Shown here: positions 1-24,310 of the stretch, in pieces
Layout: each line of letters opens with the position of its first letter
Numbering within the stretch: position 1 is the first letter of the stretch
DNA from: Hemiscyllium ocellatum
Taxonomy: Eukaryota
Length of the DNA stretch: 64,000 nucleotides
Assembly (NCBI RefSeq): GCF_020745735.1
Contig: NC_083418.1
Span: 6,173,374 to 6,237,373, forward strand
Direction: 5' to 3'
Program-made: the position numbers and the translations under genes
The notes under the pieces: model-generated
Seen by the model: the letters and a program-made list of their open reading frames with translations, nothing else
What the model was told of the DNA's origin: nothing
Databases searched by the model: none

Positions 1-3000
1 GTGTCAGTGAATGAAAGCATTAAGACTGACTCATTGAATGACAGAGAGATACTCTACTCTTTGAATTAAGACATTCAGTCCGTAACATTGAATTGAATGA
101 GTGCACTTTGTTTCATTGAATGAACGAGGGCAGTAGGATTCACTAAACAAGTGAATCACGAAAAGTTTATTTCATTGCAACAAGGATTATGGTTTGATTC
201 ATTGAATCAATGCAATGAGTCAATCAATGCAGTTTGTAGAAAAGTTGATAGCGTTGTACTTGACACTTTGAACGAATGAGATTAGCCCTACTCATTGAAT
301 TAACAGGTGCAGTTGAGTTCATGGAGTGAATGTGTGCAGTTCGATTGTGACAATGTGTGGAGCTTGTGACATGCAACGAATGTGACCTGCTCTACTCTTT
401 GAATTAACAGGACCAGTCTTTTTCATTGAATTAACGTGTGCAGTTTGATTCACTCACCAGAGTGAGTTAGGTTTGTTCCATTGAAACAAGGAATAAGGTT
501 TGATTCATTGAATCAGTGATTGTAGTTTGATTCAATGAATTCAGCTTGTGTCATTGAATGAAAGCATTAAGCTTGACTCATTGAATGAATGAGAGATGCT
601 CTACTCTCTGAATTAAGACCTGCAGTCTGTATCATTGAATTGAATGAGCGCAGTTTGTTTCATTGAATGAACGAGTACTGTAGGATTCACTAAACAAGTG
701 AATCACGAAATGTTTGTTTCATTGAAACAAGGAATACGGTTTGATTCTTTGAATCAATTCAATGATTTATAAATGCAGTTTCTTTAATTGAATGAAAGCG
801 TTGTGCTTGACACTTTGAAGGAATGAGAGTCGCTCCACTCTTTGAATTAACAGGTACAGTTTAGTTCATGGGGTGAATGTGTGCAGTTTGATTGAGACAA
901 TGTGTCAAGCTTGTGACATTGAACGAATGAGAGCAGCTCTACTTATTGAATTGACAAGTACAGCCTCTTTCATTGAATGAACGTGTGCAGTTTGATTCAC
1001 TAACCTGAGTGAGATAGGTTTGTTCCATTGAAACGAGGAACAAGGTTGGATACATTGAATCAGTGCTTGTAGTTTGATTCAATGATTCAATGAATGCAGC
1101 TTGCTTCATTGAATGAAAGCGTTAATCGTGACAGACTGAAAGAATGAGAGAAGCTCTACTCAGTGAATTAAGACCTGCAGTCTGTATCATTCAACTGAAC
1201 GAGTGCAGTTTATTTCATTGAATGAACGAGTGCAGTACGATTGACTAAACAAGTAGATCACAAAATGTTTGTTCCATTGAAACAATGAATACGGTTTGAT
1301 TCATTGAATCAATTCAATGATTTAATGAATACAGTTTGTATAATTGAATGAAAGCGTTGTGCTTGACACTTTGAAGAAATGAGAGACCCTCCATTCATTG
1401 AATCAACAGGTGCAGTTTAGTTCATGGAGGGAATGTGTGCAGTTTGATTGAGACAATGTGTGAAGCTTGTGACATTGAACGAATGAGAGCAGCTCTGCTT
1501 ATTGAATTTACAAGTACAACCTCTTTCATTGAATGAACGTGTGCAGTTTGATTCACTAACCTGAGTGAGTTAGGTTTGTTCCAGGGAAACAAGGAATAAG
1601 GTTTGATTCATTGAATCAGTGATTGTAGTTTGATTCAATGATTCAATGAATGCATCTTGCTTCTTTGAATGAAAACATGAGGCTTGACCCATTGAATGCA
1701 TGAGAGAAGCTCAATTCATTGAATTTAGTTCTGCAGTCTCTATCAATTGGTGCAGTTTGTTTCATTGAATGAACGAGTGCAGTAGGATTCACTAAACAAT
1801 TGAATCACGAAATATTTGTTTCATTGAAACAAGGATTCTGGTTTGACTCATTGAATCAATTCAATGACTTAATGAATGCAGTTTGTAGAAAAGATTGATA
1901 GCATTGTGCTTGACACTTTGAAGGATTGAGAGAAGCTCCACTCATTGAACTAACAGGTGCAGTCTAATTAATGGGGAGAAGTGTGCAGTTTGTTTGAGAC
2001 AATGTGTGAAGCTTGTGACAGGAACGAATGTGACCTGCTCTACTCTTTGAATTAACAGGACCAGTCTTTTTCATTGAATTAACGTGTGCAGTTTGATTCA
2101 CTAACCAGAGTGAGTTAGGTTTGTTCCATTGAAACAAGGAATAAGGTTTGATTCATTGAATCAGTGATTGTAGTTTGATTCAATGAATTCAGCTTGTGTC
2201 ATTGAATGAAAGCATTAAGCTTGACTCATTGAATGAATGAGAGATGCTCTACTCTCTGAATTAAGACCTGCAGCCTGTATCATTGAATTGAATGAGCGCA
2301 GTTTGTTTCATTGAATGAACGAGTACTGTAGGATTCACTAAACAAGTGAATCACGAAATCTTTGTTTCATTGAAACAAGGAATACGGTTTGATTCTTTGA
2401 ATCAATTCAATGATTTATAAATGCAGTTTCTTTAATTGAATGAAAGCGTTGTGCTTGACACTTTGAAGGAATGAGAGTCGCTCCACTCTTTGAATTAACA
2501 GGTACAGTTTAGTTCATGGGGTGAATGTGTGCAGTTTGATTGAGACAATGTGTCAAGCTTGTGACATTGAACGAATGAGAGCAGCTCTACTTATTGAATT
2601 GACAAGTACAGCCTCTTTCATTGAATGAACGTGTGCAGTTTGATTCACTAGCCAGAGTGAGATAGGTTTGTTCCATTGAAACGAGGAACAAGGTTGGATA
2701 CATTGAATCAGTGCTTGTAGTTTGATTCAATGATTCAATGAATGCAGCTTGCTTCATTGAATGAAAGCGTTAATCGTGACAGACTGAAAGAATGAGAGAA
2801 GCTCTACTCAGTGAATTAAGACCTGCAGTCTGTATCATTGAATTGAACGAGTGCAGTTTATTTCATTGAATGAACGAGTGCAGTACGATTCACTAAACAA
2901 GTGAATCACGAAATGTTTGTTTCATTGAAACAAGGAATACGGTTTGATTCTTTGAATCAATTCAATGATTTATAAATGCAGTTTCTTTAATTGAATGAAA

Positions 3001-4754
3001 GCGTTGTGCTTGACACTTTGAAGGAATGAGAGTCGCTCCACTCTTTGAATTAACAGGTGCAGTTTAGTTCATGGGGTGAATGTGTGCAGTTTGATTGAGA
3101 CAATGTGTCAAGCTTGTGACATTGAACGAATGAGAGCAGCTCTACTTATTGAATTGACAAGTACAGCCTCTTTCATTGAATGAACGTGTGCAGTTTGATT
3201 CACTAGCCAGAGTGAGTTAGGTTTGCTCCATTCAAACAAGGAATAAAGTTTGATTCATTGAATCAGTGATTGTAGTTTGATTCAATGATTCAATGAATTC
3301 AACTTGTGTCAGTGAATGAAAGCATTAAGCTTGACTCATTGAATGAAAGAGAGATACTCTACTCTTTGAATTAAGACATACAGTATGTAAAATTGAATTG
3401 AATGAGTGCAGTTTGTTTCATTGAATGAACGAGTGCAGTAGGATTCACTAAGCAAGTGATGCACGAAATGTTTGTTTCATTGAAACAAGGATTATGGTTT
3501 GACTCATTGAATGTTTTAATGATTTAATGAATGCAGTTTCTTTAATTGAATGAAAGCGTTGTGCTTGACACTTTGAAGGAATGAGACACTCTCCACACAT
3601 TGAATCAACAGGTGCAGTTTAGTTCATGGAGTGAATGTGTGCAGTTTGATTGAGACAATGTGTGGAGCTTGTGACATTGAACGAATGAGACTAGTTCTGA
3701 TCATTGAATTGACAAGTACAGCCTCTTTCATTGAATGAACGTGTGCCGTTTGATTCACTAACCTGTGTGAGATAGGTTTGTTCCATTGAAACGAGGAACA
3801 AAGTTGAATACATTGAATCAGTGCTTGTAGTTTGATTCAATGATTCAATGAATGCAGCTTGCTTCATTGAATGAAAGCATTAATCATGACAGACTGAAAG
3901 AATGAGAGAAGCTCTACTCAGTGAATTAAGACCTGCAGTCTGTATCATTCAATTGAACGAGTGCAGTTTATTTCATTGAATGAACGAGTGCAGTACGATT
4001 TACTAAACAAGTGAATCACGAAATGTTTGTTTCATTGAAACAAGGATTATGGTTTGACTCATTGAATTGATTCAATGACTTAATGAATGTAGTTTGTAGA
4101 AAAGATTGATAGCATTGTGTTTGACACTTTGAAGGAATGAGAGAAGCTCCACTCATTGAATTAACAGGTGCAGTTTAGTTCATGGAGTGTATGTGTGCAA
4201 TATGATTGAGGCAATGTGTGAATCTTGTGACATTGAACGAATGAGACTATGTCTGCTCATTGAATTGACAAGTGCAGCCTCTTTCAATGAATGAACGTAT
4301 GCAGTATGATTCACAAACTGAGTCAGGTTTGCTCCATTCAAACAAGGAATAAGGTTTGATTCCCTGAATCAGTGATTGTAGTTTGATTCAATGATTCAAT
4401 GAATGCAGCTTGTGTCTTTGAATGAAAGCATTAAGCATGACCCATTGAATGAATGAGAGAGTCTCTACTCAGTGAATTAAGACATGCAGTCTGTATCAGT
4501 GAATTGAATGAGTGCAGTTTGTTTCAGTGAATGAAGGAGTGCAGTAGGATTTACTAAACAAGTGAATCACGAAATGTTTGTTTCATTGAAACAAGGAATA
4601 CGGTTTGATTCTTTGAATCAATTCAATGATTTAATGAATGCAGTCTCTTTAATTGAATGAAAGCGCTGTGCTTGCCACTTTGAAGGAATGAGAGTCGCTC
4701 CACTCTTTGAATTAACAGGTACAGTTTAGTTCATGGAGAGAATGTGTGCAGATT
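1..4754 (+). repeat. Tandem satellite array, ~550 bp monomer, orientation 1 (CATTGAATGAA-rich strand); continues off the window start
   Basis: The same landmark recurs at 1, 548, 1103, 1659 and 2196 (periods 537-556 bp). Monomers are highly similar and AT-rich. Strand label is arbitrary. Confidence 0.97.
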
Positions 4755-7700
4755 CACTCAGTTAGTGATTCAACATGCACACGTTCATTCAATGAAAAAG
4801 GCTGGACTTGTCAATTCAAAGAGTAGAGCAGGTCACATTCCTTCAACGTCACAAGCTTCACACGTTGTCTCAATCAAACTGCCCACATTCACTCCATAAA
4901 CAAAAGTGCACCTGTTAATTCGATGAGTGGAGCTTCTCTCATTCCTTCAAAGTGTCATGCACAACGCTATCAACCTTTTCTACAAACTGCATTCATTGAA
5001 TGATTGAATTGATTCAATGAGTCAAACCATAATCCTTGTTTCAATGAAACAAACATTTCGTGATTCACTTGTTTAGTAAATCCTACTGCACTCGTTCATT
5101 CAATGAAACAAACTGCACTCATGGAATTCAATGACACAGACTGCATGTCTTAATTCAATGAGTAGAGACTCTCTCATTCATTCAATGGGTCATGCTTAAT
5201 GCTTTCATTCAAAGACACAAGCTGCATTCATTGAATCATTGAATCAAACTACAATCACTGATTCAGGGAATCAAACCTTATTCCTTGTTTGAATGGAGCA
5301 AACCTGACTCAGTTTGTGAATCATACTGCATACGTTCATTCATTGAAAGAGGCTGCACTTGTCAATTCAATGAGCAGACATAGTCTCATTCGTTCAATGT
5401 CACAAGATTCACACATTGCCTCAATCATATTGCACACATACACTCCATGAACTAAACTGCACCTGTTAATTCAATGAGTGGAGCTTCTCTCATTCCTTCA
5501 AAGTGTCAAGCACAATGCTATCAATCTTTTCTACAAACTACATTCATTAAGTCATTGAATTGATTCAATGAGTCAAACCATAATCCTTGTTTCAATGAAA
5601 CAAACATTTCGTGATTCACTTGTTTAGTAAATCGTACTGCACTCGTTCATTCAATGAAATAAACTGCACTCGTTCAATTGAATGATACAGACTGCAGGTC
5701 TTAATTCACTGAGTAGAGCTTCTCTCATTCTTTCAGTCTGTCATGATTAATGCTTTCATTCAATGAAGCAAGCTGCATTCATTGAATCATTGAATCAAAC
5801 TACAAGCACTGATTCAATGTATTCAACTTTGTTCCTCGTCTCAATGGAACAAACCTATCTCACACAGGTTAGTGAATCAAACGGCACACGTTCATTCAAT
5901 GAAAGAGGCTGTACTTGTCAATTCAATGATCAGAACTAGTCTCATTCGTTCAATGTCACAAGCTCCACACATTGCCTCAATCAAACTGCACACATTCACT
6001 CCATGAACTAAACTGCACCTGTTGATTCAATGTGTGGAGAGTGTCTCATTCCTTCAAAGTGTCAAGCACAACGCTTTCATTCAATTAAAGAAACTGCATT
6101 CATTAAATCATTAAAACATTCAATGAGTCAAACCATAATCCTTGTTTCAATGAAACAAACATTTCGTGCATCACTTGCTTAGTGAATCCTACTGCACTCG
6201 TTCATTCAATGAAACAAACTGCACTCATTCAATTCAATTTTACATACTGCATGTCTTAATTCAAAGTGTAGAGTATCTCTCTTTCATTCAATGAGTCAAG
6301 CTTAATGCTTTCATTCACTGACACAAGTTGAATACATTGAATCATTGAATCAAACTACAATCACTGATTCAATGAATCAAACTTTATTCCTTGTTTGAAT
6401 GGAGCAAACCTAACTCACTCTGGCTAGTGAATCAAACTGCACACGTTCATTCAATGAAAGAGGCTGTACTTGTCAATTCAATAAGTAGAGCTGCTCTCAT
6501 TCGTTCAATGTCACAAGCTTGACACATTGTCTCAATCAAACTGCACACATTCACCCCATGAACTAAACTGCACCTGTTAATTCAAAGAGTGGAGCGACTC
6601 TCATTCCTTCAAAGTGTCAAGCACAACGCTTTCATTCAATTAAAGAAACTGCATTTATAAATCATTGAATTGATTCAAAGAATCAAACCGTATTCCTTGT
6701 TTCAATGAAACAAACATTTCGTGATTCACTTGTTTAGTGAATCGTACTGCACTCGTTCATTCAATGAAATAAACTGCACTCGTTCAATTCAATGATACAG
6801 ACTGCAGGTCTTAATTCACTGAGTAGAGCTTCTCTCATTCTTTCAGTCTGTCACGATTAACGCTTTCATTCAATGAAGCAAGCTGCATTCATTGAATCAT
6901 TGAATCAAACTACAAGCACTGATTCAATGTATCCAACCTTGTTCCTCGTTTCAATGGAACAAACCTATCTCACTCAGGTTAGTGAATCAAACTGCACACG
7001 TTCATTCAATGAAAGAGGCTGTACTTGTCAATTCAATAAGTAGAGCTGCTCTCATTCGTTCAATGTCACAAGCTTGACACATTGTCTCAATCAAACTGCA
7101 CACATTCACCCCATGAACTAAACTGAAACCTGTTAATTCAAAGAGTGGAGCGACTCTCATTCCTTCAAAGTGTCAAGCACAACGCTTTCATTCAATTAAA
7201 GAAACTGCATTTATAAATCATTGAATTGATTCAAAGAATCAAACCGTATTCCTTGTTTCAATGAAACAAAGATTTCGTGATTCACTTGTTTAGTGAATCC
7301 TACAGTACTCGTTCATTCAATGAAACAAACTGCGCTCATTCAATTCAATGATACAGGCTGCAGGTCTTAATTCAGAGAGTAGAGCATCTCTCATTCATTC
7401 AATGAGTCAAGCTTAATGCTTTCATTCAATGACACAAGCTGAATTCATTGAATCAAACTACAATCACTGATTCAATGAATCAAACCTTATTCCTTGTTTC
7501 AATGGAACAAACCTAACTCACTCTGGTTAGTGAATCAAACTGCACACGTTAATTCAATGAAAAAGACTGGTCCTGTTAATTCAAAGAGTAGAGCAGGTCA
7601 CATTCGTTCCATGTCACAAGCTTCACACATTGTCTCAAACAAACTGCACACTTCACCCCATTAATTAAACTGCACCTGTTAATTCAATGAGTGGAGCTTC

Positions 7701-10700
7701 TCTCAATCCTTCAAAGTGTCAAGCACAATGCTATCAATCTTTTCTACAAACTGCATTCATTAAGTCATTGAATTGATTCAATGAGTCAAACCAGAATCCT
7801 TGTTTCAATGAAACAAATATTTCGTGATTCAATTGTTTAGTGAATCCTACTGCACTCGTTCATTCAATGAAACAAACTGCACTAATTGATAGAGACTGCA
7901 GAACTAAATTCAATGAATTGAGCTTCTCTCATGCATTCAATGGGTCAAGCCTCATGTTTTCATTCAAAGAAGCAAGATGCATTCATTGAATCATTGAATC
8001 AAACTACAATCACTGATTCAATGAATCAAACCTTATTCCTTGTTTCCCTGGAACAAACCTAACTCACTCAGGTTAGTGAATCAAACTGCGCACGTTCATT
8101 CAATGAAAGAGGTTGTACTTGTAAATTCAATAAGCAGAGCTGCTCTCATTCGTTCAATGTCACAAGCTTCACACATTGTCTCAAACAAACTGCACACATT
8201 CCCTCCATGAACTAAACTGCACCTGTTGATTCAATGAATGGAGGGTCTCTCATTTCTTCAAAGTGTCAAGCACAACGCTTTCATTCAATTATACCAACTG
8301 TATTCATTAAATCATTGAATTGATTCAATGAATCAAACCGTATTCATTGTTTCAAAAGAACAAACATTTTGTGATCTACTTGTTTAGTCAATCGTACTGC
8401 ACTCGTTCATTCAATGAAATAAACTGCACTCGTTCAGTTGAATGATACAGACTGCAGGTCTTAATTCACTGAGTAGAGCTTCTCTCATTCTTTCAGTCTG
8501 TCACGATTAACGCTTTCATTCAATGAAGCAAGCTGCATTCATTGAATCATTGAATCAAACTCCAAGCACTGATTCAATGTATCCAACCTTGTTCCTCGTT
8601 TCAATGGAACAAACCTATCTCACTCAGGTTAGTGAATCAAACTGCACACGTTCATTCAATGAAAGAGGCTGTATTTGTCAATTCAATAAGTAGAGCTGCT
8701 CTCATTCGTTCAATGTCACAAGCTTGACACATTGTCTCAATCAAACTGCACACATTCACCCCATGAACTAAACTGTACCTGTTAATTCAAAGAGTGGAGC
8801 GACTCTCATTCCTTCAAAGTGTCAAGCACAACGCTTTCATTCAATTAAAGAAACTGCATTTATAAATCATTGAATTGATTCAAAGAATCAAACCGTATTC
8901 CTTGTTTCAATGAAACAAAGATTTCGTGATTCACTTGTTTAGTGAATCCTACAGTACTCGTTCATTCAATGAAACAAACTGCGCTCATTCAATTCAATGA
9001 TACAGGCTGCAGGTCTTAATTCAGAGAGTAGAGCATCTCTCATTCATTCAATGAGTCAAGCTTAATGCTTTCATTCAATGACACAAGCTGAATTCATTGA
9101 ATCAAACTACAATCACTGATTCAATGAATCAAACCTTATTCCTTGTTTCAATGGAACAAACCTAACTCACTCTGGTTAGTGAATCAAACTGCACACGTTA
9201 ATTCAATGAAAAAGACTGGTCCTGTTAATTCAAAGAGTAGAGCAGGTCACATTCGTTCCATGTCACAAGCTCCACACATTGTCACAATCGAACTGCACAC
9301 ATTCACTCCATGAACTCAACTGCACCTGTTAATTCAATGAGTAGAGCTAATCTCATTCGTTCAAAGTGTCAAGTACAACGCTATCAACTTTTCTACAAAC
9401 TGCATTGATTGACTCATTGCATTGATTCAATGAATCAAACCATAATCCTTGTTGCAATGAAATAAACTTTTCGTGATTCACTTGTTTAGTGAATCCTACT
9501 GCACTCGTTCATTCAATGAAACAAAGTGCACTCATTCAATTCAATGTTACGGACTGAATGTCTTAATTCAAAGAGTAGAGTATCTCTCTGTCATTCAATG
9601 AGTCAGTCTTAATGCTTTCATTCACTGACACAAGCTGAATTCATTGAATCACTGAATCAAACTAAAATCACTGATTCAATGAATCAAACCTTATTCCTTG
9701 TTTGAATGGAACAAACCTATCTCACTCAGGTTAGTGAATCAAACGGCACACGTTCATTCAATGAAAGAGGCTGCACTTGTCAATTCAATGAGCAGAACTA
9801 GTCTCATTCGCTCAGTGTCACAAGCTACACATATTCCCTCAATCAATCTGCACACATTCACTCCATGAACTGAACTGTACCTGTTAATCAATGAGTGGAA
9901 CGACTCTCATTCCTTCAAAGTGTCAAGCACAGCGCTTTCATTCAATTCAAGAAACTGCATTCATTAAATCATTGAATTGATTAAAGAATAAACAATATTC
10001 CTTGTTTCAATGAAACAAACATTTCGTGATTCACTTGTTTACTGCATCCTACTGCCCTCGTTCATTCAATGAAACAAACTGCGCTCATTGAATTCAATGA
10101 TACAGACTGCAGGACTCAATTCAATGAGTAGAGCTTCTCTCATTCATTCAAGGTGTTAAGCTTAACGCTTCCATTCAAGGAAGCAAGCTGCATTCCCTCA
10201 ATCATTGAATCAAACTACAAGCACTGATTCAATGAAGCAAACTTCATTCCTCGTTTCAATGGAACAAACCTATCTCACTCAGTTAGTGATTCAACATGCA
10301 CACGTTCATTCAATGAAAAAGGCTGGACTTGTCAATTCAAAGAGTAGAGCAGGTCACATTCGTTCCATGTCACAAGCTTCACACATTGTCTCAAACAAAC
10401 TGCACAATTCACCCCATTAACTAAACTGCACCTGTTAATTCAATGAGTGGAGCTTCTCTCAATCCTTCAAAGTGTCAAGCACAATGCTATCAATCTTTTC
10501 TACAAACTGCATTCATTAAATCATTGAATTGATTCAATGAGTCAAACCATAATCCTTGTTTCAATGAAACAAACATTTCGTGCTTCACTTGTTTAGTGAA
10601 TCCTACTGCACTCCTTCATTCAATGAAACAAACTGCACTCATTCAATTCACTGATACAGACTGCATGTCTTAATTCAATGAGTAGAGACTCTCTCATTCA

Positions 10701-13700
10701 TTCAATGGGTCATGCTTAATGCTTTCATTCAAAGACACAAGCTGCATTCATTGAATCATTGAATCAAACTACAATCACTGATTCAGGGAATCAAACCTTA
10801 TTCCTTGTTTGAATGGAGCAAACCTGACTCAGTTTGTGAATCATACTGCATACGTTCATGCATTGAAAGAGGCTGCACTTGTCAATTCAATGAGCAGACA
10901 TAGTCTCATTCGTTCAATGTCACAAGATTCACACATTGCCTCAATCATATTGCACACATACACTCCATGAACTAAACTGCACCTGTTAATTCAATGAGTG
11001 GAGCTTCTCTCATTCCTTCAAAGTGTCAAGCACAATGCTATCAATCTTTTCTACAAACTACATTCATTAAGTCATTGAATTGATTCAATGAGTCAAACCA
11101 TAATCCTTGTTTCAATGAAACAAACATTTCGTGATTCACTTGTTTAGTAAATCGTACTGCACTCGTTCATTCAATGAAATAAACTGCACTCGTTCAATTG
11201 AATGATACAGACTGCAGGTCTTAATTCACTGAGTAGAGCTTCTCTCATTCTTTCAGTCTGTCATGATTAATGCTTTCATTCAATGAAGCAAGCTGCATTC
11301 ATTGAATCATTGAATCAAACTACAAGCACTGATTCAATGTATTCAACTTTGTTCCTCGTTTCAATGGAACAAACCTATCTCACACAGGTTAGTGAATCAA
11401 ACGGCACACGTTCATTCAATGAAAGAGGCTGTACTTGTCAATTCAATGATCAGAACTAGTCTCATTCGTTCAATGTCACAAGCTCCACACATTGTCTCAA
11501 TCAAACTGCACACATTCACTCCATGAACTAAACTGCACCTGTTGATTCAATGTGTGGAGAGTGTCTCATTCCTTCAAAGTGTCAAGCACAACGCTTTCAT
11601 TCAATTAAAGAAACTGCATTCATTAAATCATTAAAACATTCAATGAGTCAAACCATAATCCTTGTTTCAATGAAACAAACATTTCGTGCATCACTTGCTT
11701 AGTGAATCCTACTGCACTCGTTCATTCAATGAAACAAACTGCACTCATTCAATTCAATTTTACATACTGCATGTCTTAATTCAAAGAGTAGAGTATCTCT
11801 CTTTCATTCAATGAGTCAAGCTTAATGCTTTCATTCACTGACACAAGTTGAATTCATTGAATCATTGAATCAAACTGCAATCACTGATTCAATGAATCAA
11901 ACTTTATTCCTTGTTTGAATGGAGCAAACCTAACTCACTCTGGCTAGTGAATCAAACTGCACACGTTCATTCAATGAAAGAGGCTGTACTTGTCAATTCA
12001 ATAAGTAGAGCTGCTCTCATTCGTTCAATGTCACAAGCTTGACACATTGTCTCAATCAAACTGCACACATTCACCCCATGAACTAAACTGCACCTGTTAA
12101 TTCAAAGAGTGGAGCGACTCTCATTCCTTCAAAGTGTCAAGCACAACGCTTTCATTCAATTAAAGAAACTGCATTTATAAATCATTGAATTGATTCAAAG
12201 AATCAAACCGTATTCCTTGTTTCAATGAAACAAAGATTTCGTGATTCACTTGTTTAGTGAATCCTACAGTACTCGTTCATTCAATGAAACAAACTGCGCT
12301 CATTCAATTCAATGATACAGGCTGCAGGTCTTAATTCAGAGAGTAGAGCATCTCTCATTCATTCAATGAGTCAAGCTTAATGCTTTCATTCAATGACACA
12401 AGCTGAATTCATTGAATCAAACTACAATCACTGATTCAATGAATCAAACCTTATTCCTTGTTTCAATGGAACAAACCTAACTCACTCTGGTTAGTGAATC
12501 AAACTGCACACGTTAATTCAATGAAAAAGACTGGTCCTGTTAATTCAAAGAGTAGAGCAGGTCACATTCGTTCCATGTCACAAGCTTCACACATTGTCTC
12601 AAACAAACTGCACACTTCACCCCATTAATTAAACTGCACCTGTTAATTCAATGAGTGGAGCTTCTCTCATTCCTTCAAAGTGTCAAGCACAATGCTATCA
12701 ATCTTTTCTACAAACTGCATTCATTGAATCATTGAATTGATTCAATGAGTCAAACCAGAATCCTTGTTTCAATGAAACAAATATTTCGTGATTCAATTGT
12801 TTAGTGAATCCTACTGCACTCGTTCATTCAATGGAACAATCTGCACTAATTGATAGAGACTGCAGAACTGAATTCAATGAATAGAGCTTCTCTCATGCAT
12901 TCAATGGGTCAAGCCTCATGTTTTCATTCAAAGAAGCAAGATGCATTCATTGAATCATTGAATCAAACTACAATCACTGATTCAATGAATCAAACCTTAT
13001 TCCTTGTTTCCCTGGAACAAACCTAACTCACTCAGGTTAGTGAATCAAACTGCACACGTTCATTCAATGAAAGAGGTTGTACTTGTAAATTCAATAAGCA
13101 GAGCTGCTCTCATTCGTTCAATGTCACAAGCTTCACACATTGTCTCAATCAAACTGCACACATTCCCTCCATGAACTAAACTGCACCTGTTGATTCAATG
13201 AATGGAGGGTCTCTCATTTCTTCAAAGTGTCAAGCACAACGCTTTCATTCAATTATACAAACTGTATTCATTAAATCATTGAATTGATTCAATGAATCAA
13301 ACCGTATTCGTTGTTTCAATGGAACAAACATTTTGTGATCTACTTGTTTAGTCAATCGTACTGCACTCGTTCATTCAATGAAATAAACTGCACTCGTTCA
13401 GTTGAATGATACAGACTGCAGGTCTTAATTCACTGAGTAGAGCGTCTCTCATTCTTTCAGTCTGTCACGTTTAACGCTTTCATTCAATGAAGCAAGCTGC
13501 ATTCATTGAATCATTGAATCAAACTACAAGCACTGATTCAATGTATCCAACCTTGTTCCTCGTTTCAATGGAACAAACCTATCTCACTCAGGTTAGTGAA
13601 TCAAACTGCACACGTTCATTCAATGAAAGAGGCTGCACTTGTCAATTCAATGAGTAGAGCTAGTCTCATTCGTTCATTGTCACAAGCTCCACACATTGTC

Positions 13701-16700
13701 ACAATCAAACTGCACACTTCACCCCATTAACTAAACTGCACCTGTTAATTCAATGAGTGGAGCTTCTCTCAATCCTTCAAAGTGTCAAGCACAATGCTAT
13801 CAATCTTTTCTACAAACTGCATTCATCAAGTCATTGAATTGATTCAATGAGTCAAACCAGAATCCTTGTTTCAATGAAACAAATATTTCGTGATTCAATT
13901 GTTTAGTGAATCCTACTGCACTCGTTCATTCAATGAAACAAACTGCACTAATTGATAGAGACTGCAGAACTAAATTCAATGAATAGAGCTTCTCTCATGC
14001 ATTCAATGGGTCAAGCCTCATGTTTTCATTCAAAGAAGCAAGATGCATTCATTGAATCATTGAATCAAACTACAATCACTGATTCAATGAATCAAACCTT
14101 ATTCCTTGTTTCCCTGGAACAAACCTAACTCACTCAGGTTAGTGAATCAAACTGCACACGTTCATTCAATGAAAGAGGTTGTACTTGTAAATTCAATAAG
14201 CAGAGCTGCTCTCATTCGTTCAATGTCACAAGCTTCACACATTGTCTCAATCAAACTGCACACATTCCCTCCATGAACTAAACTGCACCTGTTGATTCAA
14301 TGAATGGAGGGTCTCTCATTTCTTCAAAGTGTCAAGCACAACGCTTTCATTCAATTATACAAACTGTATTCATTAAATCATTGAATTGATTCAATGAATC
14401 AAACCGTATTCATTGTTTCAATGGAACAAACATTTTGTGATCTACTTGTTTAGTGAATCCTACTGCACTCGTTCATTCAATGAAATAAACTGCACTCGTT
14501 CAGTTGAATGATACAGACTGCAGGTCTTAATTCACTGAGTAGAGCGTCTCTCATTCTTTCAGTCTGTCACGTTTAACGCTTTCATTCAATGAAGCAAGCT
14601 GCATTCATTGAATCATTGAATCAAACTACAAGCACTGATTCAATGTATCCAACCTTGTTCCTCGTTTCAATGGAACAAACCTATCTCACTCAGGTTAGTG
14701 AATCAAACTGCACACGTTCATTCAATGAAAGAGGCTGCACTTGTCAATTCAATGAGTAGAGCTAGTCTCATTCGTTCATTGTCACAAGCTCCACACATTG
14801 TCACAATCAAACTGCACACTTCACCCCATTAACTAAACTGCACCTGTTAATTCAATGAGTGGAGCTTCTCTCAATCCTTCAAAGTGTCAAGCACAATGCT
14901 ATCAATCTTTTCTACAAACTGCATTCATCAAGTCATTGAATTGATTCAATGAGTCAAACCAGAATCCTTGTTTCAATGAAACAAATATTTCGTGATTCAA
15001 TTGTTCAGTGAATCCTACTGCACTCGTTCATTCAATGAAACAAACTGCACTAATTGATAGAGACTGCAGAACTAAATTCAATGAATAGAGCTTCTCTCAT
15101 GCATTCAATGGGTCAAGCCTCATGTTTTCATTCAAAGAAGCAAGATGCATTCATTGAATCATTGAATCAAACTACAATCACTGATTCAATGAATCAAACC
15201 TTATTCCTTGTTTCCCTGGAACAAACCTAACTCACTCAGGTTAGTGAATCAAACTGCACACGTTCATTCAATGAAAGAGGTTGTACTTGTAAATTCAATA
15301 AGTAGAGCTGCTCTCATTCGTTCAATGTCACAAGCTTCACACATTGTCTCAATCAATCTGCACACATTCTCTCCATGAACTAAACTGTACCTGTTAATTC
15401 AAAGAGTGGAGCGACTCTCATTCCATCAAAGTGGCAAGCACAGCGCTTTCATTCAATTAAAGAGACTGCATTCATTAAATCATTGAATTGATTCAAAGAA
15501 TCAAACCGTATTCCTTGTTTCAATTGAACAAACATTTTGTGATCTACTTCTTTAGTGAAAACTACTGCACTCGTTCATTCAATGAAACAAACTGCGCTCA
15601 TTCAATTCAATGATACAGACTGCAGGTCTTAATTCAATGTGTAGAGCTTCTCACATTCATTCAAGGTGTTAAGCTTAACGCTTTCATTCAAGGAAGCAAG
15701 CTGCATTCCCTCAATCATTGAATCAAACTAAAATCACTGATTCAATGAATCGAACTTTATTCCTTGTTTCAATGGAACAAACCTCAGGTTAGTGAATCAA
15801 ACTGCACACGTTAATTCAATGAAAAAACTGGTCTTGTCAATTCAAAGAGAAGAGCAGGTCACATTCGTTCCATGTCACAAGCTTCACACATTGTCTCAAT
15901 CAAACTGCACACATTCACTCCATGAACTAAACTGCACCTGCTGATTCAATGAATGGAGGGTCTCTCATTTCTTCAAAGTATCAAGCACAACGCTTTCATT
16001 CAATTCTACAAACTGCATTCATTAAATCATTAAATTGATTCAATGAATCAAACCGTATTCCTTGTTTCAATTGAACAAACATTTTGTGATCTACTTCTTT
16101 AGTGAAAACTACTGCACTCGTTCATTCAATGAAACAAACTGCACTCATTCAATTGAATGATACAGACTGCAGGTCTTAATTCACCGAGGAGAGCTTCTCT
16201 CATTCTTTCAGTCTGTCACGATTAACGCTTTCATTCAATGAAGCAAGCTGCATTCATTGAATCATTGAATCAAACCACAATCACTGCTTCAGGGAGTCAA
16301 ACCCGATTCGTTGTTTGAATGGAACAAACCTAACTCAGTTAGTGAATCAAACTGCACACGTTCATTCATTGAAAGAGGCTGCACTTGTCAATTCAAAGAG
16401 CAGAGCTAGTCTCATTCGTTCAAAGTCAAAAGCTTCACACATTGTCTCAATCAAACTGCACACATTCACTCCATGAACAAAACTGCACCTGTTAATTCAA
16501 TGAGCGGAGCTTCTCTCAATCCTTCAAAGTGTCAAGCACAACGCTTTCAATCTTTTCTACAAACTGCATTCATTAAGTCATTGAATTGATTCAATGAATC
16601 AAACCATAATCCTTGTTTCAATGAAACAAACATTTCGTGATTCACTTGTTTAGTGAATCCTACTGCACTCCTTCATTCAATGAAACAAACTGCACTCATT

Positions 16701-19700
16701 CAATTCACTGATACAGACTGCATGTCTTAATTCAATGAGTAGAGACTCTCTCATTCATTCAATGGGTCATGCTTAATGCTTTCATTCAAAGACACAAGCT
16801 GCATTCATTGAATCATTGAATCAAACTACAATCACTGATTCAGGGAATCAAACCTTATTCCTTGTTTGAATGGAGCAAACCTGACTCAGTTTGTGAATCA
16901 TACTGCATACGTTCATTCATTGAAAGAGGCTGCACTTGTCAATTCAATGAGCAGACATAGTCTCATTCGTTCAATGTCACAAGATTCACACATTGCCTCA
17001 ATCATATTGCACACATACACTCCATGAACTAAACTGCACCTGTTAATTCAATGAGTGGAGCTTCTCTCATTCCTTCAAAGTGTCAAGCACAATGCTATCA
17101 ATCTTTTCTACAAACTACATTCATTAAGTCATTGAATTGATTCAATGAGTCAAACCATAATCCTTGTTTCAATGAAACAAACATTTCGTGATTCACTTGT
17201 TTAGTAAATCGTACTGCACTCGTTCATTCAATGAAATAAACTGCACTCGTTCAATTGAATGATACAGACTGCAGGTCTTAATTCACTGAGTAGAGCTTCT
17301 CTCATTCTTTCAGTCTGTCATGATTAATGCTTTCATTCAATGAAGCAAGCTGCATTCATTGAATCATTGAATCAAACTACAAGCACTGATTCAATGTATT
17401 CAACTTTGTTCCTCGTTTCAATGGAACAAACCTATCTCACTCAGGTTAGTGAATCAAACGGCACACGTTCATTCAATGAAAGAGGCTGCACTTGTCAATT
17501 CAATGATCAGAACTAGTCTCATTCGTTCAATGTCACAAGCTCCACACATTGTCTCAATCAAACTGCACACATTCACTCCATGAACTAAACTGCACCTGTT
17601 GATTCAATGTGTGGAGAGTGTCTCATTCCTTCAAAGTGTCAAGCACAACGCTTTCATTCAATTAAAGAAACTGCATTCATTAAATCATTAAAACATTCAA
17701 TGAGTCAAACCATAATCCTTGTTTCAATGAAACAAACATTTCGTGCATCACTTGCTTAGTGAATCCTACTGCACTCGTTCATTCAATGAAACAAACTGCA
17801 CTCATTCAATTCAATTTTACATACTGCATGTCTTAATTCAAAGAGTAGAGTATCTCTCTTTCATTCAATGAGTCAAGCTTAATGCTTTCATTCACTGACA
17901 CAAGTTGAATTCATTGAATCATTGAATCAAACTACAATCACTGATTCAATGAATCAAACTTTATTCCTTGTTTGAATGGAGCAAACCTTACTCACTCTGG
18001 CTAGTGAATCAAACTGCACACGTTCATTCAATGAAAGAGGCTGTACTTGTCAATTCAATAAGTAGAGCTGCTCTCATTCGTTCAATGTCACAAGCTTGAC
18101 ACATTGTCTCAATCAAACTGCACACATTCACCCCATGAACTAAACTGCACCTGTTAATTCAAAGAGTGGAGCGACTCTCATTCCTTCAAAGTGTCAAGCA
18201 CAACGCTTTCATTCAATTAAAGAAACTGCATTTATAAATCATTGAATTGATTCAAAGAATCAAACCGTATTCCTTGTTTCAATGAAACAAACATTTCGTG
18301 ATTCACTTGTTTAGTGAATCGTACTGCACTCGTTCATTCAATGAAATAAACTGCACTCGTTCAATTCAATGATACAGACTGCAGGTCTTAATTCACTGAG
18401 TAGAGCTTCTCTCATTCTTTCAGTCTGTCACGATTAACGCTTTCATTCAATGAAGCAAGCTGCATTCATTGAATCATTGAATCAAACTACAAGCACTGAT
18501 TCAATGTATCCAACCTTGTTCCTCGTTTCAATGGTACAAACCTATCTCACTCAGGTTAGTGAATCAAACTGCACACGTTCATTCAATGAAAGAGGCTGCA
18601 CTTGTCAATTCAATGAGTAGACCTAGTCTCATTCGTTCATTGTCACAAGCTCCACACATTGTCACAATCGAACTGCACACATTCACTCCATGAACTCAAC
18701 TGCACCTGTTAATTCAATGAGTAGAGCTAATCACATTCGTTCAAAGTGTCAAGTACAACGCTATCAACTTTTCTACAAACTGCATTGATTGATTCATTGT
18801 ATTGATTCAATGAGTCAAACCAGAATCCTTGTTGCAATGAAATAAACATTTCGTGATTCACTTGTTTAGTGAATCCTACTGCACTCGTTCATTCAATGAA
18901 ACAAAGTGCACTCATTCAATTCAATGGTACGGACTGAATGTCTTAATTCAAAGAGTAGAGCATCTCTATTTCATTCAATGTGTCAGTCTTAATGCTTTCA
19001 TTCACTGACACAAGCTGAATTCATTGAATCATTGAATCAAACTACAATCACTGATTCAATGAATCAAACCTTATTACTTGTTTCAATGGAACAAACCTAA
19101 CTCACTCAGGTTAGTGAATCAAACTGCACACGTTCATTCAATGAAAAAGACTGGTCTTGTCAATTCAAAGAATAGAGCAGGTCACATTCGTTCCATGTCA
19201 CAAGCTACAAACATTGCCTCAAACAAACTGCACAATTCACCCCATTAACTAAACTGCACCTGTTAATTCAATGAGTGGAGCTTCTCTCAATCCTTCAAAG
19301 TGTCAAGCACAATGCTATCAATCTTTTCTACAAACTGCATTCATTAAGTCATTGAATTGATTCAATGAGTCAAACCAGAATCCTTGTTTCAATGAAACAA
19401 ATATTTCGTGATTCAATTGTTTAGTGAATCCTACTGCACTCGTTCATTCAATGAAACAATCTGCACTAATTGATAGAGATTGCAGAACTGAATTCAATGA
19501 ATAGAGCTTCTCTCATGCATTCAATGGGTCAAGCCTCATGTTTTCATTCAAAGAAGCAAGATGCATTCATTGAATCATTGAATCAAACTACAATCACTGA
19601 TTCAATGAATCAAACCTTATTCCTTGTTTCCCTGGAACAAACCTAACTCACTCAGGTTAGTGAATAAAACTGCACACGTTCATTCAATGAAAGAGGTTGT

Positions 19701-22700
19701 ACTTGTAAATTCAATAAGTAGAGCTGCTCTCATTCGTTCAATGTCACAAGCTTCACACATTGTCTCAATCAAACTGCACACATTCACTCCATGAACTAAA
19801 CTGCACCTGTTGATTCAATGAATGGAGGGTCTCTCATTTCTTCAAAGTGTCAAGCACAACGCTTTCATTCAATTATACAAACTGTATTCATTAAATCATT
19901 GAATTGATTCAATGAATCAAACCGTATTCATTGTTTCAATGGACCAAACATTTTGTGATCTACTTGTTTAGTGAATCGTACTGCACTCGTTCATTCAATG
20001 AAATAAACTGCACTCGTTCAATTGAATGATACAGACTGCAGGTCTTAATTCAAAGAGTAGAGTATCTCTCTTCCATTCAATGAGTCAGTCATAATGCTTT
20101 CTTTCACTGACACAATCTGAATTCATTGTATCACTGATTCAAACTAAAATCACTGATTCAATGAATCAAACCTTATTCCTTGTTTCAATGGAACAAACCT
20201 ATCTCACTCTATTAGTGTATCAAAATGCACATCTTCATTCAGTGAAAGAGGCTGCACTTGTCAATTCAAAGAGCAGAACTAGTCTCATTCGCTCAGTGTC
20301 ACAAGCTACACATATTGTCTCAATCAATCTGCACACATTCTCTCCATGAACTAAACTGTACCTGTTAATCAATGAGTGGAGCGACTCTCATTCCTACAAA
20401 GTGTCAAGCACAGCGCTTCCATTCAATTCAAGAAACTGCATTCATTAAATCATTGATTTGATTCAAAGAATAAACAATATTCCTTGTTTCAATGAAACAA
20501 ACATTTCGTGATTCACTTGTTTACTGCATCCTACTGCCCTCGTTCATTCAATGAAACAAACTGCGCTCATTGAATTCAATGATACAGACTGCAGGACTTA
20601 ATTCAATGAGTAGAGCTTCTCTCATTCATTCAAGGTGTTAAGCTTAACTCTTACATTCAAGGAAGCAAGCTGCATTCCCTCAATCATTGAATCAAACTAC
20701 AAGCACTGATTCAATGAAGCCAACTTCATTCTTCGTTTCAATGGAACAAACCTATCACACTTATTTAGTGATTCAACATGCACACGTTCATTCAATGAAA
20801 AACGCTGGACTTGTCAATTCAAAGAGTAGAGCAGGTCACATTCGTTCAATGTCACAAGCTTCACACGTTCTCTCAATCAAACTGCACACATTCACTCCAA
20901 GAACTAAACTGCACCTGTTAATTCAATGAGTGGAGCTTCTCTCATTCCTTCAAAGTGTCAAGCACAACGCTATCAATCTTTTCTACAAACTGCATTCATT
21001 AAGTCATTGAATTGATTCAATGAATCAAACCAGAATCCTTGTTTCAATGAAACAAACATTTCGTGATTCACTTGTTCAGTGAATCCTACAGCACTCGTTC
21101 ATTCAATGAAACAAACTGCACTCATTCAATTCAATTTTACATACTGCATGTCTTAATTCAAAGAGTAGAGTATCTCTCTTTCATTCAATGAGTCAAGCTT
21201 AATTCTTTCATTCACTGACACAAGTTGAATTCATTGAATCATTGAATCAAACTGCAATCACTGATTCAATGAATCAAACTTTATTCCTTGTTTGAATGGA
21301 GCAAACCTAACTCACTCTGGTTAGTGAATCAAACTGCACACGTTCATTCAATGAAAGAGGCTGTACTTGTCAATTCAATAAGTAGAGCTGCTCTCATTCG
21401 TTCAATGTCACAAGCTTGACACATTGTCTCAATCAAACTGCACACATTCACTCCATGAACTAAACTGCACCTGTTAATTCAAAGAGTGGAGCGACTCTCA
21501 TTCCTTCAAAGTGTCAAGCACAACGCTTTCATTCAATTAAAGAAACTGCATTTATAAATCATTGAATTGATTCAAAGAATCAAACCGTATTCCTTGTTTC
21601 AATGAAACAAAGATTTCGTGATTCACTTGTTTAGTGAATCCTACAGTACTCGTTCATTCAATGAAACAAACTGCGCTCATTCAATTCAATGATACAGACT
21701 GCAGGTCTTAATTCAGAGAGTAGAGCATCTCTATTTCATTCAATGAGTCAAGCTTAATGCTTTCATTCAATGACACAAGCTGAATTCATTGAATCAAACT
21801 ACAATCACTGATTCAATGAATCAAACCTTATTCCTTGTTTCAATGGAACAAACCTAACTCACTCTGGTTAGTGAATCAAACTGCACACGTTAATTCAATG
21901 AAAAAGACTGGTCCTGTTAATTCAAAGAGGAGAGCAGGTCACATTCGTTCCATGTCACAAGCTTCACACATTGTCTCAAACAAACTGCACAATTCACCCC
22001 CTTAACTAAACTGCACCTGTTAATTCAATGAGTGGAGCTTCTCTCAATCCTTCAAAGTGTCAAGCACAATGCTATCAATCTTTTCTACAAACTGCATTCA
22101 TTAAATCATTGAATTGATTCAATGGGTCAAACCATAATCCTTGTTTCAATGAAACAAACATTTCGTGCTTCACTTGTTTAGTGAATCCTACTGCTCTCGT
22201 TCATTCAATGAAACAAACTGCACTCATTCAATTCAATTTTACATACTGCATGTCTTAATTCAAAGAGTAGAGTATCTCTCTTTCATTCAATGAGTCAAGC
22301 TTAATGCTTTCATTCACTGACACAAGTTGAATTCATTGAATCATTGAATCAAACTACAATCACTGATTCAATGAATCAAACTTTATTCCTTGTTTGAATG
22401 GAGCAAACCTAACTCACTCTGGCTAGTGAATCAAACTGCACACGTTCATTCAATGAAAGAGGCTGTACTTGTCAATTCAATAAGTAGAGCTCCTCTCATT
22501 CGTTCAATGTCACAAGCTTGACACATTGTCTCAATCAAACTGCACACATTCACTCCATGAACTAAACTGTACCTGTTAATTCAAAGAGTGGAGCTTCTCT
22601 CATTCCTTCAAAGTGTCAAGCACAACGCTTTCATTCAATTCTACAAACTGCAATCATTAAATTGATTCAATGAAACAAATATTTTGTGATCTACTTGTTT

Positions 22701-23712
22701 AGTGTATCGTACTGCACACGTTCATACAATGAAATAAACTGCACTCATTCAATTCAATGATACAGACTGCAGGTCTTAATTCACTGAGCAGAGCTTCTCT
22801 CATTCTTTCAGTCTGTCAAGATTAACGCTTTCATTCAATGAAGTAAGCGGCAGTCATTGAACCATTGAATCAAACTACAATCACTGCTTCAGGGAATCAA
22901 ACCCCATTCCTTATTTGAATGGAACAAACCTAACTCAGTTAGTGAATCAAACTGCACACGTTCATTCATTGAAAGAGGCTGTACTTGTCAATTCAATAAG
23001 TAGAGCTGGTCTCATTCGTTCAGTGTCACAAGCTTCACACATTGTCTCAATCAAACTGCACACATTCACTCCATGAACTAAACTGCACCTGTTGATTCAA
23101 TGAATGGAGGGTCTCTCATTTCTTCAAAGTGTCAAGCACAACGCTTTCATTCAATTATACAAACTGCATTCATTAAATCATTGCATTGATTCAATGAATC
23201 AAACCGTATTCGTTGTTTCAATGGAACAAACATTTCGTGATCTACTTGTTTAGTGAATCGTACTGCACTCGTTCATTCAATGAAATAAACTGCACTCGTT
23301 CAATTCAATGATACAGACTGCACGTCTTAATTCACTGAGTAGAGCTTCTCTCATTCTTTCAGTCTGTCATGATTAATGCTTTCATTCAATGAAGCAAGCT
23401 GCATTCATTGAATCATTGAATCAAACTACAAGCACTGATTCAATGTATTCAACTTTGTTCCTCGTTTCAATGGAACAAACCTATCTCACTCAGGTTAGTG
23501 AATCAAACGGCACACGTTCATTCAATGAAAGAGGCTGTACTTGTCAATTCAATGATCAGAACTAGTCTCATTCGTTCAATGTCACAACCTTCACACATTG
23601 TCTCAATCAAACTGCGCACATTCACTCCATGAACTAATCTGCACCTGTTGATTCAATGTGTGGAGAGTGTCTCGTTCCTTCAAAGTGTCAAGCACAACGC
23701 TTTCATTCAATT
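4755..23712 (-). repeat. Same ~550 bp satellite in the opposite orientation (TTCATTCAATG-rich strand), ~34 monomers with higher-order variants
   Basis: Reverse complement of the monomers in 1-4754. The array ends abruptly at ~23712 and is followed by an AT-rich degenerate tail to ~23770. Confidence 0.97.
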
Positions 23713-24087
23713 AATTCATTTAACATTCATTCAATTTAATTTCATTAAATTTCATTAAATTGAAATCATTCGAGCCTGAAAAAATTCTGGCAATAATATT
23801 GATGACTTGTGCTAGCCAAGCACTCCCAGTGCAGCTACAATACTGGCATGGACCATGTGGAAAATAAGCCAGGCATGTCCTGTGCACAGAAAATAGGTCA
23901 AACCATCCTGGCAAATTACTGCTCCATCAGTCCATGCTCAATCATGTGTTAGGTGTAGGAAGGTGCTTTCAACAGTGCTATCAAGCAGCACTAGCTCAGT
24001 CATAACCTGCTCGGTGACATAAAATGTGGGTTACGCAAGGCCTACTCAGCTCATGACTGAATTACAGACTTAATTTAAACATGGCTT

Positions 24088-24310
24088 AAAAATGTGTTGC
24101 TGGAAAAGCACACACGTCAGGCAGCAACAAAGGAGCAGGAGAATCGACGTTTTGGGCGTAAGCCCTTCTGAAGCCTGATTCCTGAAGAAGGGCTTATGCC
24201 CGAAACGTTGATTCTCCTGCTTCTTTGATGCTGCCTGACCTGCTGTGCTTTTTCAGCAACACATTTTTAAGCTCAGATCTCCAGCATCTGCGGTCCTCAC
24301 TTTCTCCTAG
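24088..24310. mobile_element. Short hairpin (inverted-repeat) interspersed element, probably Penelope-derived non-autonomous repeat
   Basis: AAAAATGTGTTGCTGGAAAAGC...GCTTTTTCAGCAACACATTTTT arms. The same family recurs at ~24945-25035, 46633-46815 and ~54975-55035. Family assignment is from recall. Confidence 0.7.

What the first reader, a model, noticed from the sequence alone, without database searches (positions are those of the whole stretch)
1..9631. Giant near-perfect palindrome (arms of at least 4.6 kb) inside the satellite
Beyond the simple change of orientation, the whole left block is a position-for-position mirror of the first ~4.6 kb of the right block, including rare monomer variants. 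Pairs checked: 1-10 with 9622-9631, 1681-1690 with 7942-7951, 2781-2790 with 6840-6849, 3301-3310 with 6320-6329 and 4200-4209 with 5421-5430. Coordinate sums stay at 9630-9632. Symmetry breaks at ~4597/5033, leaving a ~435 bp spacer. Only scattered mismatches were seen by eye, implying a very recent inverted duplication (fold-back or breakage-fusion-type event). Such a structure could extrude a cruciform. The left arm runs off the window, so its full length is unknown.
Basis: seen in the sequence. Interest (0 to 1): 0.7.

Follow-up and report, generated by a model that had tools for sequence, protein, structure and literature searches.

The report
Mirror-image repeat block in shark satellite
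A real 9.6-kb mirror-image (head-to-head) duplication sits where a 552-bp shark satellite flips orientation, but its two arms are no more alike than ordinary same-direction copies in the array, so it is a known kind of fold-back rearrangement and not an especially recent one.

Summary
Window 1-4597 is the reverse complement of 9631-5033 with 35 mismatches and 2 one-base indels (99.2%). The next-best colinear match of the left arm is 94.2%.

The satellite (1-23714, ~552-bp monomers) is built of variable higher-order units of about 8-11 monomers. Monomers of one type are 99-100% identical wherever they lie. The arms are one such unit and its mirror copy: eight monomer types in the same order on both sides.

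"Near-perfect, very recent" is overstated. In the 1.66-kb block that has other copies, the left arm differs from its mirror at 8 sites. It differs from a same-direction copy 12 kb further on at 7 sites.

The centre is a non-homologous join at 4751/4755, linking monomer phase ~343 (+) to ~465 (-). A 124-nt segment occurs on the right only, and the inner ~280 nt per side match only 82-94%.

A 118-nt short-read contig matches 4725-4840 exactly. Five samples from two studies hold two thirds of the junction words. The join is therefore real, not a chimeric long read. The arms themselves could not be read-checked.

Untested lead: the palindrome may be the core of a much larger one that includes dead IgM clusters. 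An earlier scan note (s1-195771) reports a 32-kb IgM palindrome 28 kb upstream.

The parts
1..4471 (+). Left arm, + orientation satellite (monomers L9..L2 plus the start of L1). It is cut by the window start. Monomer types outward from the centre: D C F A E B A G.
   Evidence: 99.3% to rc(5159-9631), with 28 mismatches and 2 indels. Monomer typing. GC skew +0.22.
4472..4597 (+). Transition zone of the left arm, within terminal monomer L1 (j-type).
   Evidence: 94.4% to the mirror partner 5033-5158. 4400-4597 is closer to 16807-16610 (98.5%) and 10750-10553 (98.0%) than to its mirror (96.5%).
4598..4751 (+). Left inner segment, monomer phase ~187-343, of a different monomer type from its mirror partner.
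   Evidence: 82% to rc(4879-5032). 4598-4754 is 99.4% identical (1 mismatch in 157) to 15511-15355 of monomer R20.
4752..4754 (.). Junction letters ATT between the last clear + monomer base (..GTGTGCAG) and the first clear - monomer base (CACTCAG..). Microhomology is 0-2 nt.
   Evidence: Comparison with six other + monomers and eight - monomers at the same phase. A short-read contig spans it.
4755..4878 (-). Right-only segment (monomer phase ~465 to ~343 of terminal monomer R1). This is the unpaired 'loop' of the palindrome.
   Evidence: The left array ends at phase ~342 and the right array starts at phase ~465. The best paralogue is 10276-10399 at 96%. 4844-4877 is not covered by any short-read contig.
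4879..5158 (-). Right inner segment and transition zone, the rest of the diverged terminal monomer R1.
   Evidence: 82% (4879-5032) and 94.4% (5033-5158) to the mirror. R1 is only 92-94.6% identical to the other j-type monomers.
5159..9631 (-). Right arm, - orientation satellite (monomers R1 end..R9). Same type order: D C F A E B A G.
9632..23714 (-). Rest of the right array (R10-R35). It holds further rearranged higher-order units with partial recurrences, D C H E B (R12-R16) and D C F (R23-R25). Whether it is mirrored upstream of the window is unknown.
   Evidence: The array ends at about 23714-23770.

Best explanation
This is a genuine germline head-to-head inverted duplication in a higher-order-repeat satellite, of the fold-back type.

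Shown:
- Two blocks of the same ~552-bp satellite meet in opposite orientation at 4751/4755.
- Each block runs in monomer phase up to the join. The join links phase ~343 of a + monomer to phase ~465 of a - monomer with 0-2 nt of microhomology.
- Outward from the join both sides carry the same eight monomer types in the same order.

Inferred:
- A broken or stalled 3' end inside a j-type monomer primed on the complementary strand about 122 nt further along, either on the sister chromatid or by snap-back after resection.
- It then copied the array backwards, which left the 124-nt one-sided segment.
- The event is not younger than the amplification that made the direct higher-order copies, because arm-to-arm divergence (0.8%) equals copy-to-copy divergence.
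- The innermost 150-280 nt per side were remodelled, either by an extra in-register template switch to an R20-like monomer during the event or by later patch conversion. Slower homogenisation at array edges may have added to this.
- The left arm leaves the window, so the structure is probably larger than 9.6 kb.
For: - Mirror identity is 99.2% over 4.6 kb, against 94.2% for the next-best colinear match.
- Monomer type order is identical on both sides. D C F A E B A G. Types and orders private to the two arms are present.
- There is a single non-homologous join. The phase offset is 122 nt within the same position of the higher-order unit, since both terminal monomers are followed by type D. Two random breakpoints would land this close in about 4% of cases (my estimate: 1/10 for the monomer position times 2x122/552 for the phase).
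- The geometry matches the fold-back model, with a one-copy spacer and little or no microhomology (PMC3907307).
- The join is seen in short-read contigs. Run X5 has a 118-nt contig at depth 97 on 4725-4840 with 0 mismatches, and X1 and X7 give weaker cover.
- Two thirds of the sampled words of 4726-4878 are held by samples S1-S4, and half by S6, in 2 studies.
- The arms differ at states that other monomers also carry (15 of 37 sites). This argues against a single molecule read twice.
Against: - At formation a fold-back predicts identical arms up to phase 343. Phase 187-343 is only 82% alike and phase ~60-186 only 94%, so extra events must be assumed.
- In the D-C-F block the mirror partner is not the closest copy. 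The arms may therefore be two sister units joined in inverted orientation, not template and copy.
- Microhomology at the join is at most 2 nt, which is no better than chance.
- No read longer than 118 nt was available, so the 4.6-kb colinearity rests on the assembly alone. If the earlier notes naming the epaulette shark are right, that assembly is TrioCanu from PacBio continuous long reads (PMC10587355).
- The bridging contig has 30, not 31, letters left of 4754.
Confidence: 0.6

Rival explanations
1. The junction is old and the arms are kept alike by concerted evolution. The orientation switch long predates the present sequence. Multi-monomer gene conversion or unequal exchange, including arm-to-arm conversion as in Y-chromosome palindromes, keeps the interiors at about 99%. 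The edge monomers L1 and R1 escape and diverge.
For: - The terminal monomers are the most diverged: R1 is 92-94.6% to its relatives and L1 is a chimera.
- Same-type monomers show star-like divergence whatever their orientation.
- Paired or clustered differences look like short conversion tracts: 626+712, 2651+2654 and 4068-9.
Against: - Arm-to-arm conversion should make the mirror partners the closest pair. In D-C-F they are not.
- 22 of the 37 differences are private single changes with no long identical tracts. The longest identical stretch is 641 nt.
- This model still needs an inverted duplication at the origin.
Confidence: 0.15
2. A simple inversion of part of a one-directional array. The left block is an inverted stretch of the array, with a second reciprocal junction upstream of the window. 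The mirror order arises because neighbouring higher-order units were alike.
For: Strand switches inside satellite arrays are common in complete assemblies (general knowledge; the papers listed deal with such regions). Only one junction is visible in the window.
Against: - Both breakpoints would have to fall in the same monomer position of an irregular 8-11-monomer unit and within 122 nt of the same phase, about 4% by my estimate.
- Units 2-4 of the right array do not share the order C F A E B A G, so likeness between neighbouring units is not the rule.
Confidence: 0.1
3. Assembly artefact of the arms. The join is real, but the long mirror was produced by mis-assembly or mis-polishing of noisy long reads in a satellite, or by a missed-adapter palindromic read.
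For: - The assembly is probably built from continuous long reads, polished with Arrow and short reads.
- 4844-4877 is matched by no short-read contig in any run, which hints at local consensus errors.
- The arms could not be checked with reads.
Against: - A missed-adapter read gives identical arms and a symmetric centre. Here the arms differ at 37 sites, 15 of them at states shared with other monomers.
- The centre is asymmetric and made of satellite sequence.
- The join is present in short reads of several animals.
- The structure is internal to the scaffold, since an earlier finding lies 28 kb upstream.
Confidence: 0.08
4. A foldback-type mobile element, or a 'megatransposon' like maize TR-1 knob segments: a unit with long terminal inverted arrays of tandem repeats.
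For: The layout, two inverted tandem arrays around a short centre, is that of Foldback elements and of TR-1 fold-back segments (the latter cited in PMC13011684; the resemblance is from memory).
Against: - The right array is 19 kb long and irregular.
- No coding centre, terminal motif or target-site duplication is visible. The right end fades into an A/T-rich microsatellite.
- Junction depth fits a single-copy or low-copy locus (this is an inference).
Confidence: 0.03

Closest known systems
Fold-back inverted duplications with a one-copy spacer (human constitutional inv-dup; breakage-fusion-bridge products; Hermetz et al. 2014, PMC3907307)
   Same: Inverted arms, one novel junction, a short segment present once between the arms, and little or no homology at the join.
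   Different: The spacer here is 124 nt, against 766 nt to 70 kb in that series. Microhomology is 0-2 nt, so not informative. The event lies inside a tandem array, so arm and spacer are paralogous. The inner 150-280 nt were remodelled. No terminal deletion or dicentric can be assessed.
Strand switches or inversions inside centromeric and pericentromeric satellite arrays in complete assemblies (human alpha-satellite higher-order arrays, HSat, Arabidopsis CEN180)
   Same: A satellite built of higher-order units changes orientation at a sharp point inside a monomer.
   Different: Here the two sides are position-for-position mirror copies of one irregular unit, which points to duplication and not plain inversion. 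The array is small (at least 24 kb) and lies between immunoglobulin clusters. It is not shown to be centromeric.
Large ampliconic palindromes kept alike by arm-to-arm gene conversion (human and ape Y chromosome P1-P8)
   Same: Kilobase-scale inverted arms around a spacer.
   Different: Arm identity here is 99.2%, against about 99.97% (from memory). There is no excess arm-to-arm likeness over direct copies, and the arms are satellite, not genes.
Maize TR-1 knob repeat 'fold-back DNA segments' (Ananiev et al. 1998, listed) and Drosophila Foldback elements
   Same: Tandem repeats arranged as long inverted arrays able to snap back.
   Different: There is no evidence of mobility or of many copies here. 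This is a resemblance only, recalled from memory.

Membership tests
Fold-back inverted duplication (Hermetz 2014 model) | Two inverted copies of the same segment | tested here: met
   99.2% over 4597 nt, with the same eight monomer types in mirror order.
Fold-back inverted duplication (Hermetz 2014 model) | A one-copy spacer between the arms, contiguous with one arm | tested here: met
   4755-4878 (124 nt) continues the right array in phase and has no partner on the left.
Fold-back inverted duplication (Hermetz 2014 model) | Short inverted microhomology (2-8 nt) or an insertion at the spacer/inverted-copy junction | tested here: inconclusive
   The three letters ATT at 4752-4754 fit either side for at most 1-2 nt, or are inserted.
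Fold-back inverted duplication (Hermetz 2014 model) | Arms identical right up to the spacer at formation | tested here: not met
   The inner 154 nt are 82% alike and the next 126 nt 94%. This needs a second template switch or later conversion.
Fold-back inverted duplication (Hermetz 2014 model) | Copy number of the arms doubled relative to the spacer in reads | not testable with these tools
   Only short contigs were available, and satellite depth reflects the whole family.
Palindrome maintained by arm-to-arm gene conversion (Y-type) | Arms more alike than any other copies of the same sequence | tested here: not met
   In D-C-F, L vs its mirror shows 8 differences, L vs unit 3 shows 7, and mirror vs unit 3 shows 7. 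In D-C the mirror pair is the most distant.
Missed-adapter / fold-back chimeric long-read artefact | Arms identical apart from random errors, a symmetric centre, and no support in other libraries | tested here: not met
   There are 37 differences, 15 at states shared with other monomers. The centre is asymmetric. The junction is in short-read contigs of several samples.
Higher-order-repeat satellite | Monomers of distinct types recur in order, with far higher identity between same-type monomers than between neighbours | tested here: met
   Same-type monomers are 98.5-100% identical and different types 84-93%. Recurring orders are D C F and D C H E B. The units are irregular, at 8-11 monomers.

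The most novel reading that the evidence does not exclude
The satellite palindrome may be only the core of an inverted duplication with arms of 50 kb or more, carrying a dead IgM heavy-chain cluster on each side. With the tail-to-tail IgM palindrome reported 28 kb upstream (s1-195771), it would form a + - + ladder of three cluster copies with alternating tail-to-tail and head-to-head junctions. That is the footprint of repeated fold-back or breakage-fusion-bridge cycles, here multiplying shark immunoglobulin clusters.

Basis: under the mirror map x -> 9631-x, the right arm of the upstream palindrome falls on window 37.8-53.9 kb. That interval holds V (39.2-39.5 kb, with an in-frame stop), J (40.7 kb) and Cmu1 (50.65-50.97 kb). 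It ends about 120 nt before Cmu2 (54.02 kb). This matches the earlier finding's title, 'V-D-D-J-Cmu1', with no free parameter. The upstream sequence could not be read, so this is untested.
Probability: 0.4. Interest if true: 0.6.

Novelty: new member of a known kind. Interest (0 to 1): 0.33.

Why it matters
On its own this is a clean, base-resolved example of a fold-back junction inside a higher-order satellite of a cartilaginous fish. It is useful as a caution: in such arrays, 99% arm identity says nothing about age, because all same-type monomers are that alike.

It would matter more if the mirror continues into the flanks. A ladder of alternating inverted junctions around IgM clusters would show that fold-back or breakage-fusion-bridge cycles can multiply the cluster-type antibody loci of sharks, with a satellite acting as the fragile site.

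Tried and rejected
- Chance or ordinary higher-order periodicity as the cause of the mirror. Rejected: the next-best colinear match is 94.2% and no other unit shares the order.
- Dating the event from the arm identity. Abandoned. With the published pedigree rate of 7e-10 per site per generation (PMC10587355), 0.76% would mean millions of generations. But 15 of the 37 differences are shared with other monomers (conversion or mis-polishing). The transition:transversion ratio is only 16:19, and consensus errors cannot be excluded.
- Copy number of the junction from contig depth. Depth 97 in X5 would fit a homozygous single-copy site in a parent sequenced at 113-135x. The runs are coded, however, so this stays a guess.
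- Reading the upstream sequence. The search of earlier findings refuses negative coordinates. Searches by sequence were blank. The look-up of encoding contigs on the 215-aa ORF at 35074-35718 found no record.
- Rfam scan of the whole window: no family reached its threshold.
- Literature on satellites of this species: only one paper held both search terms, a lamprey genome preprint, which I did not open.
Full report
**What is there**

The first 23.7 kb of the window are one satellite with a monomer of about 552 bp. The monomer is itself built from 27-28-nt and ~104-nt sub-repeats. GC skew is +0.22 up to about 4 kb and -0.22 from 6 to 24 kb. BLAST of one monomer shows + orientation from 1 to 4754/4755 and - orientation from 4754/4755 to 23714. 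Earlier notes of this scan name the genome as the epaulette shark. I did not test that. I used it only to find the assembly paper.

**Check of the observation**

- Ungapped mirror identity peaks only at coordinate sums 9630 and 9632. The register shifts at two 1-nt indels, 2020/7611 and 2502/7128.
- In gapped alignment 1-4597 and rc(5033-9631) differ by 35 substitutions and 2 indels, which is 99.2%.
- The next-best colinear matches of the left arm are 94.2% (21221-16453) and 91%, over a background of 86-89%. The best direct repeat inside the right array is 92.3%.
- The mirror is therefore real and far beyond what the array's periodicity gives.

**Anatomy of the centre**

- The left array ends at monomer phase ~342-343 (4751-4754). 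The right array starts at phase ~465 (4755).
- Compared with other monomers at the same phases, the + side is normal up to ..GTGTGCAG (4751) and the - side is normal from CACTCAG.. (4755). The three letters ATT between them fit either side for at most 1-2 nt. This is a non-homologous join.
- 4755-4878 (124 nt, phases 465-343) exists on the right only.
4598-4751 vs 4879-5032 is 82%, and 4472-4597 vs 5033-5158 is 94.4%. Only 1-4471 vs 5159-9631 is 99.3%.
- The left inner piece, 4598-4754, is 99.4% identical to 15511-15355 in monomer R20.
- The right terminal monomer R1 has no relative closer than 94.6%.

**The array is a higher-order repeat, which changes how the 99% should be read**

I cut the array into 9 left and 35 right monomers and compared all pairs. 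Same-type monomers are 98.5-100% identical wherever they lie. For example R2 = R23 at 100%, R2-R12 at 99.8%, R17-R19 at 99.8% and L3-R13 at 99.8%. Different types are 84-93% identical.

Outward from the join, the type strings at the 98.5% threshold are:
- Left: . D C F A E B A G
- Right: . D C F A E B A G . . D C H E B I B I . . . D C F . . . . . H . . . .

The arms are thus one irregular higher-order unit and its mirror copy. The order F A E B A G and type G are private to the two arms. At 150-nt resolution most of the palindrome has 99-100% matches elsewhere in the right array.

Where other copies exist, the mirror partner is not the closest:
- Over D-C-F (1661 nt), L vs its mirror shows 8 differences, L vs R23-25 shows 7, and the mirror vs R23-25 shows 7.
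- Over D-C (1106 nt), the mirror pair is the most distant of six pairs (7 differences against 3-6).

Of the 37 arm differences, 10 are private to the left and 12 to the right. The other 15 are states shared with other monomers, some in pairs that look like short conversion tracts. Transitions to transversions are 16:19.

I conclude that the arms are as diverged as the direct copies. The inverted duplication is therefore not younger than the amplification, or last homogenisation, of the array. 'Very recent' does not follow.

**Is it an artefact?**

Read laying could use only short contigs:
- Run X5 has a 118-nt contig at depth 97 that lies on 4725-4840 with no mismatch. It crosses the join with 27-30 letters on the left and 86 on the right. 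That is one letter short of the tool's 31-letter rule if the join is placed at 4754.
- X7 and X1 give weaker cover beyond the join.
- Other contigs leave the window at 4754 with the normal + continuation GATTGAGACAAT, as expected for ordinary monomers.

A second word search on 4726-4878 found two thirds of the sampled words in samples S1-S4, and half in S6, across two studies.

If the genome is the epaulette shark, the assembly is TrioCanu from PacBio continuous long reads, polished with Arrow (PMC10587355). The resequenced animals would then be one family, so this is support from other libraries, not from a population.

A missed-adapter or fold-back chimeric read is excluded for three reasons. 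The centre is asymmetric and made of satellite. The arms differ at 37 sites, and 15 of those carry states seen in other monomers. The short reads support the join.

The 4.6-kb colinearity itself remains unverified by reads. One oddity remains: no contig matches 4844-4877 in any run, and the same four sampled words are missing everywhere. This may be a local consensus error.

**Mechanism**

The geometry fits the fold-back class described for human inverted duplications (PMC3907307). It has one novel join, both ends in the same position of the higher-order unit only 122 nt apart in phase, a one-sided 124-nt segment and no homology. A 3' end primes on the complementary strand a short distance away and copies back.

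Two random inversion breakpoints would match this closely in roughly 4% of cases (my estimate).

A plain fold-back does not explain the 82-94% zone next to the centre. Either the event included a further in-register switch to an R20-like monomer, or patches were converted later and the array-edge monomers drifted. I cannot tell which arm is the template, nor whether the arms are template and copy or two sister units.

A single strand of 4500-5130 folds into one long imperfect hairpin (-224 kcal/mol, z = -30). Extrusion of a cruciform from duplex DNA with such a centre is unlikely (established knowledge).

**Context and the most interesting open reading**

The window also holds an IgM heavy-chain cluster on the + strand:
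- V with an in-frame stop at 39.2-39.5 kb, and J at 40.7 kb.
- Cmu1 at 50.65-50.97 kb, and Cmu2 with a frameshift at 54.02-54.42 kb.
- Cmu3 at 56.3 kb, and Cmu4 with the tailpiece at 57.0-57.4 kb.

An earlier finding (s1-195771) reports a 32.1-kb palindrome of two tail-to-tail dead IgM V-D-D-J-Cmu1 clusters. I read its position line as meaning that it ends 28,202 nt before the window.

Mirrored about the satellite centre, its right arm maps to window 37.8-53.9 kb. That interval contains V to Cmu1 and stops about 120 nt short of Cmu2.

This fit has no free parameter. It suggests that the mirror runs through the whole array and its flank, giving three cluster copies in + - + order with alternating junctions, a breakage-fusion-bridge-like ladder. 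I could not read the upstream DNA, so I rate this at about 0.4.

**Verdict**

This is a real palindromic fold-back junction in a higher-order satellite, of a known kind. The claims of recency and of a cruciform are not. Interest is moderate to low unless the large-palindrome reading is confirmed.

Noticed in passing
window 39181-57434 (+): A complete but dead IgM heavy-chain cluster. V has an in-frame stop after FR2 (..EWLFW*). J encodes WGQGTMVTV at 40725, with a 23-spacer RSS-like site at 40704. Cmu1 is at 50627-50974. Cmu2 at 54019-54421 is split over two frames (a frameshift). Cmu3 is at 56301-56627. Cmu4 with the secretory tailpiece is at 57027-57431, with a best PDB match to IgM constant regions at E = 1e-38.
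   Followed up: partly
window 4844-4877: No short-read contig at 97% or better covers this 34-nt stretch in any of four runs. The same 4 of 12 sampled words of 4726-4878 are missing from every holder. This may be a consensus error of the assembly inside the palindrome centre.
   Followed up: no
window 24113-24242: A 57-nt-arm, 89% complementary mini-palindrome with a 16-nt loop lies about 400 nt beyond the end of the satellite. A related sequence seems to recur near 46.6-46.9 kb. It resembles the Penelope-type mini-palindromes reported by earlier notes on this genome. No hammerhead or other Rfam family reached its threshold.
   Followed up: partly
window 35071-36600 (-): A fragmented reverse-transcriptase ORF of a retroelement (RVT_1, E = 2e-22 and 9e-8) lies between the satellite and the IgM cluster. 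A pair of 188-nt inverted repeats sits at 32298-32671 / 34413-34791.
   Followed up: no
window 4598-4754 and 15355-15511: These two pieces are 157 nt long, differ at one base and lie in opposite orientation 10.6 kb apart. All other matches of the piece are 95.5% or lower. This is evidence of sequence exchange between the inverted arrays, or of a shared donor outside the window.
   Followed up: partly
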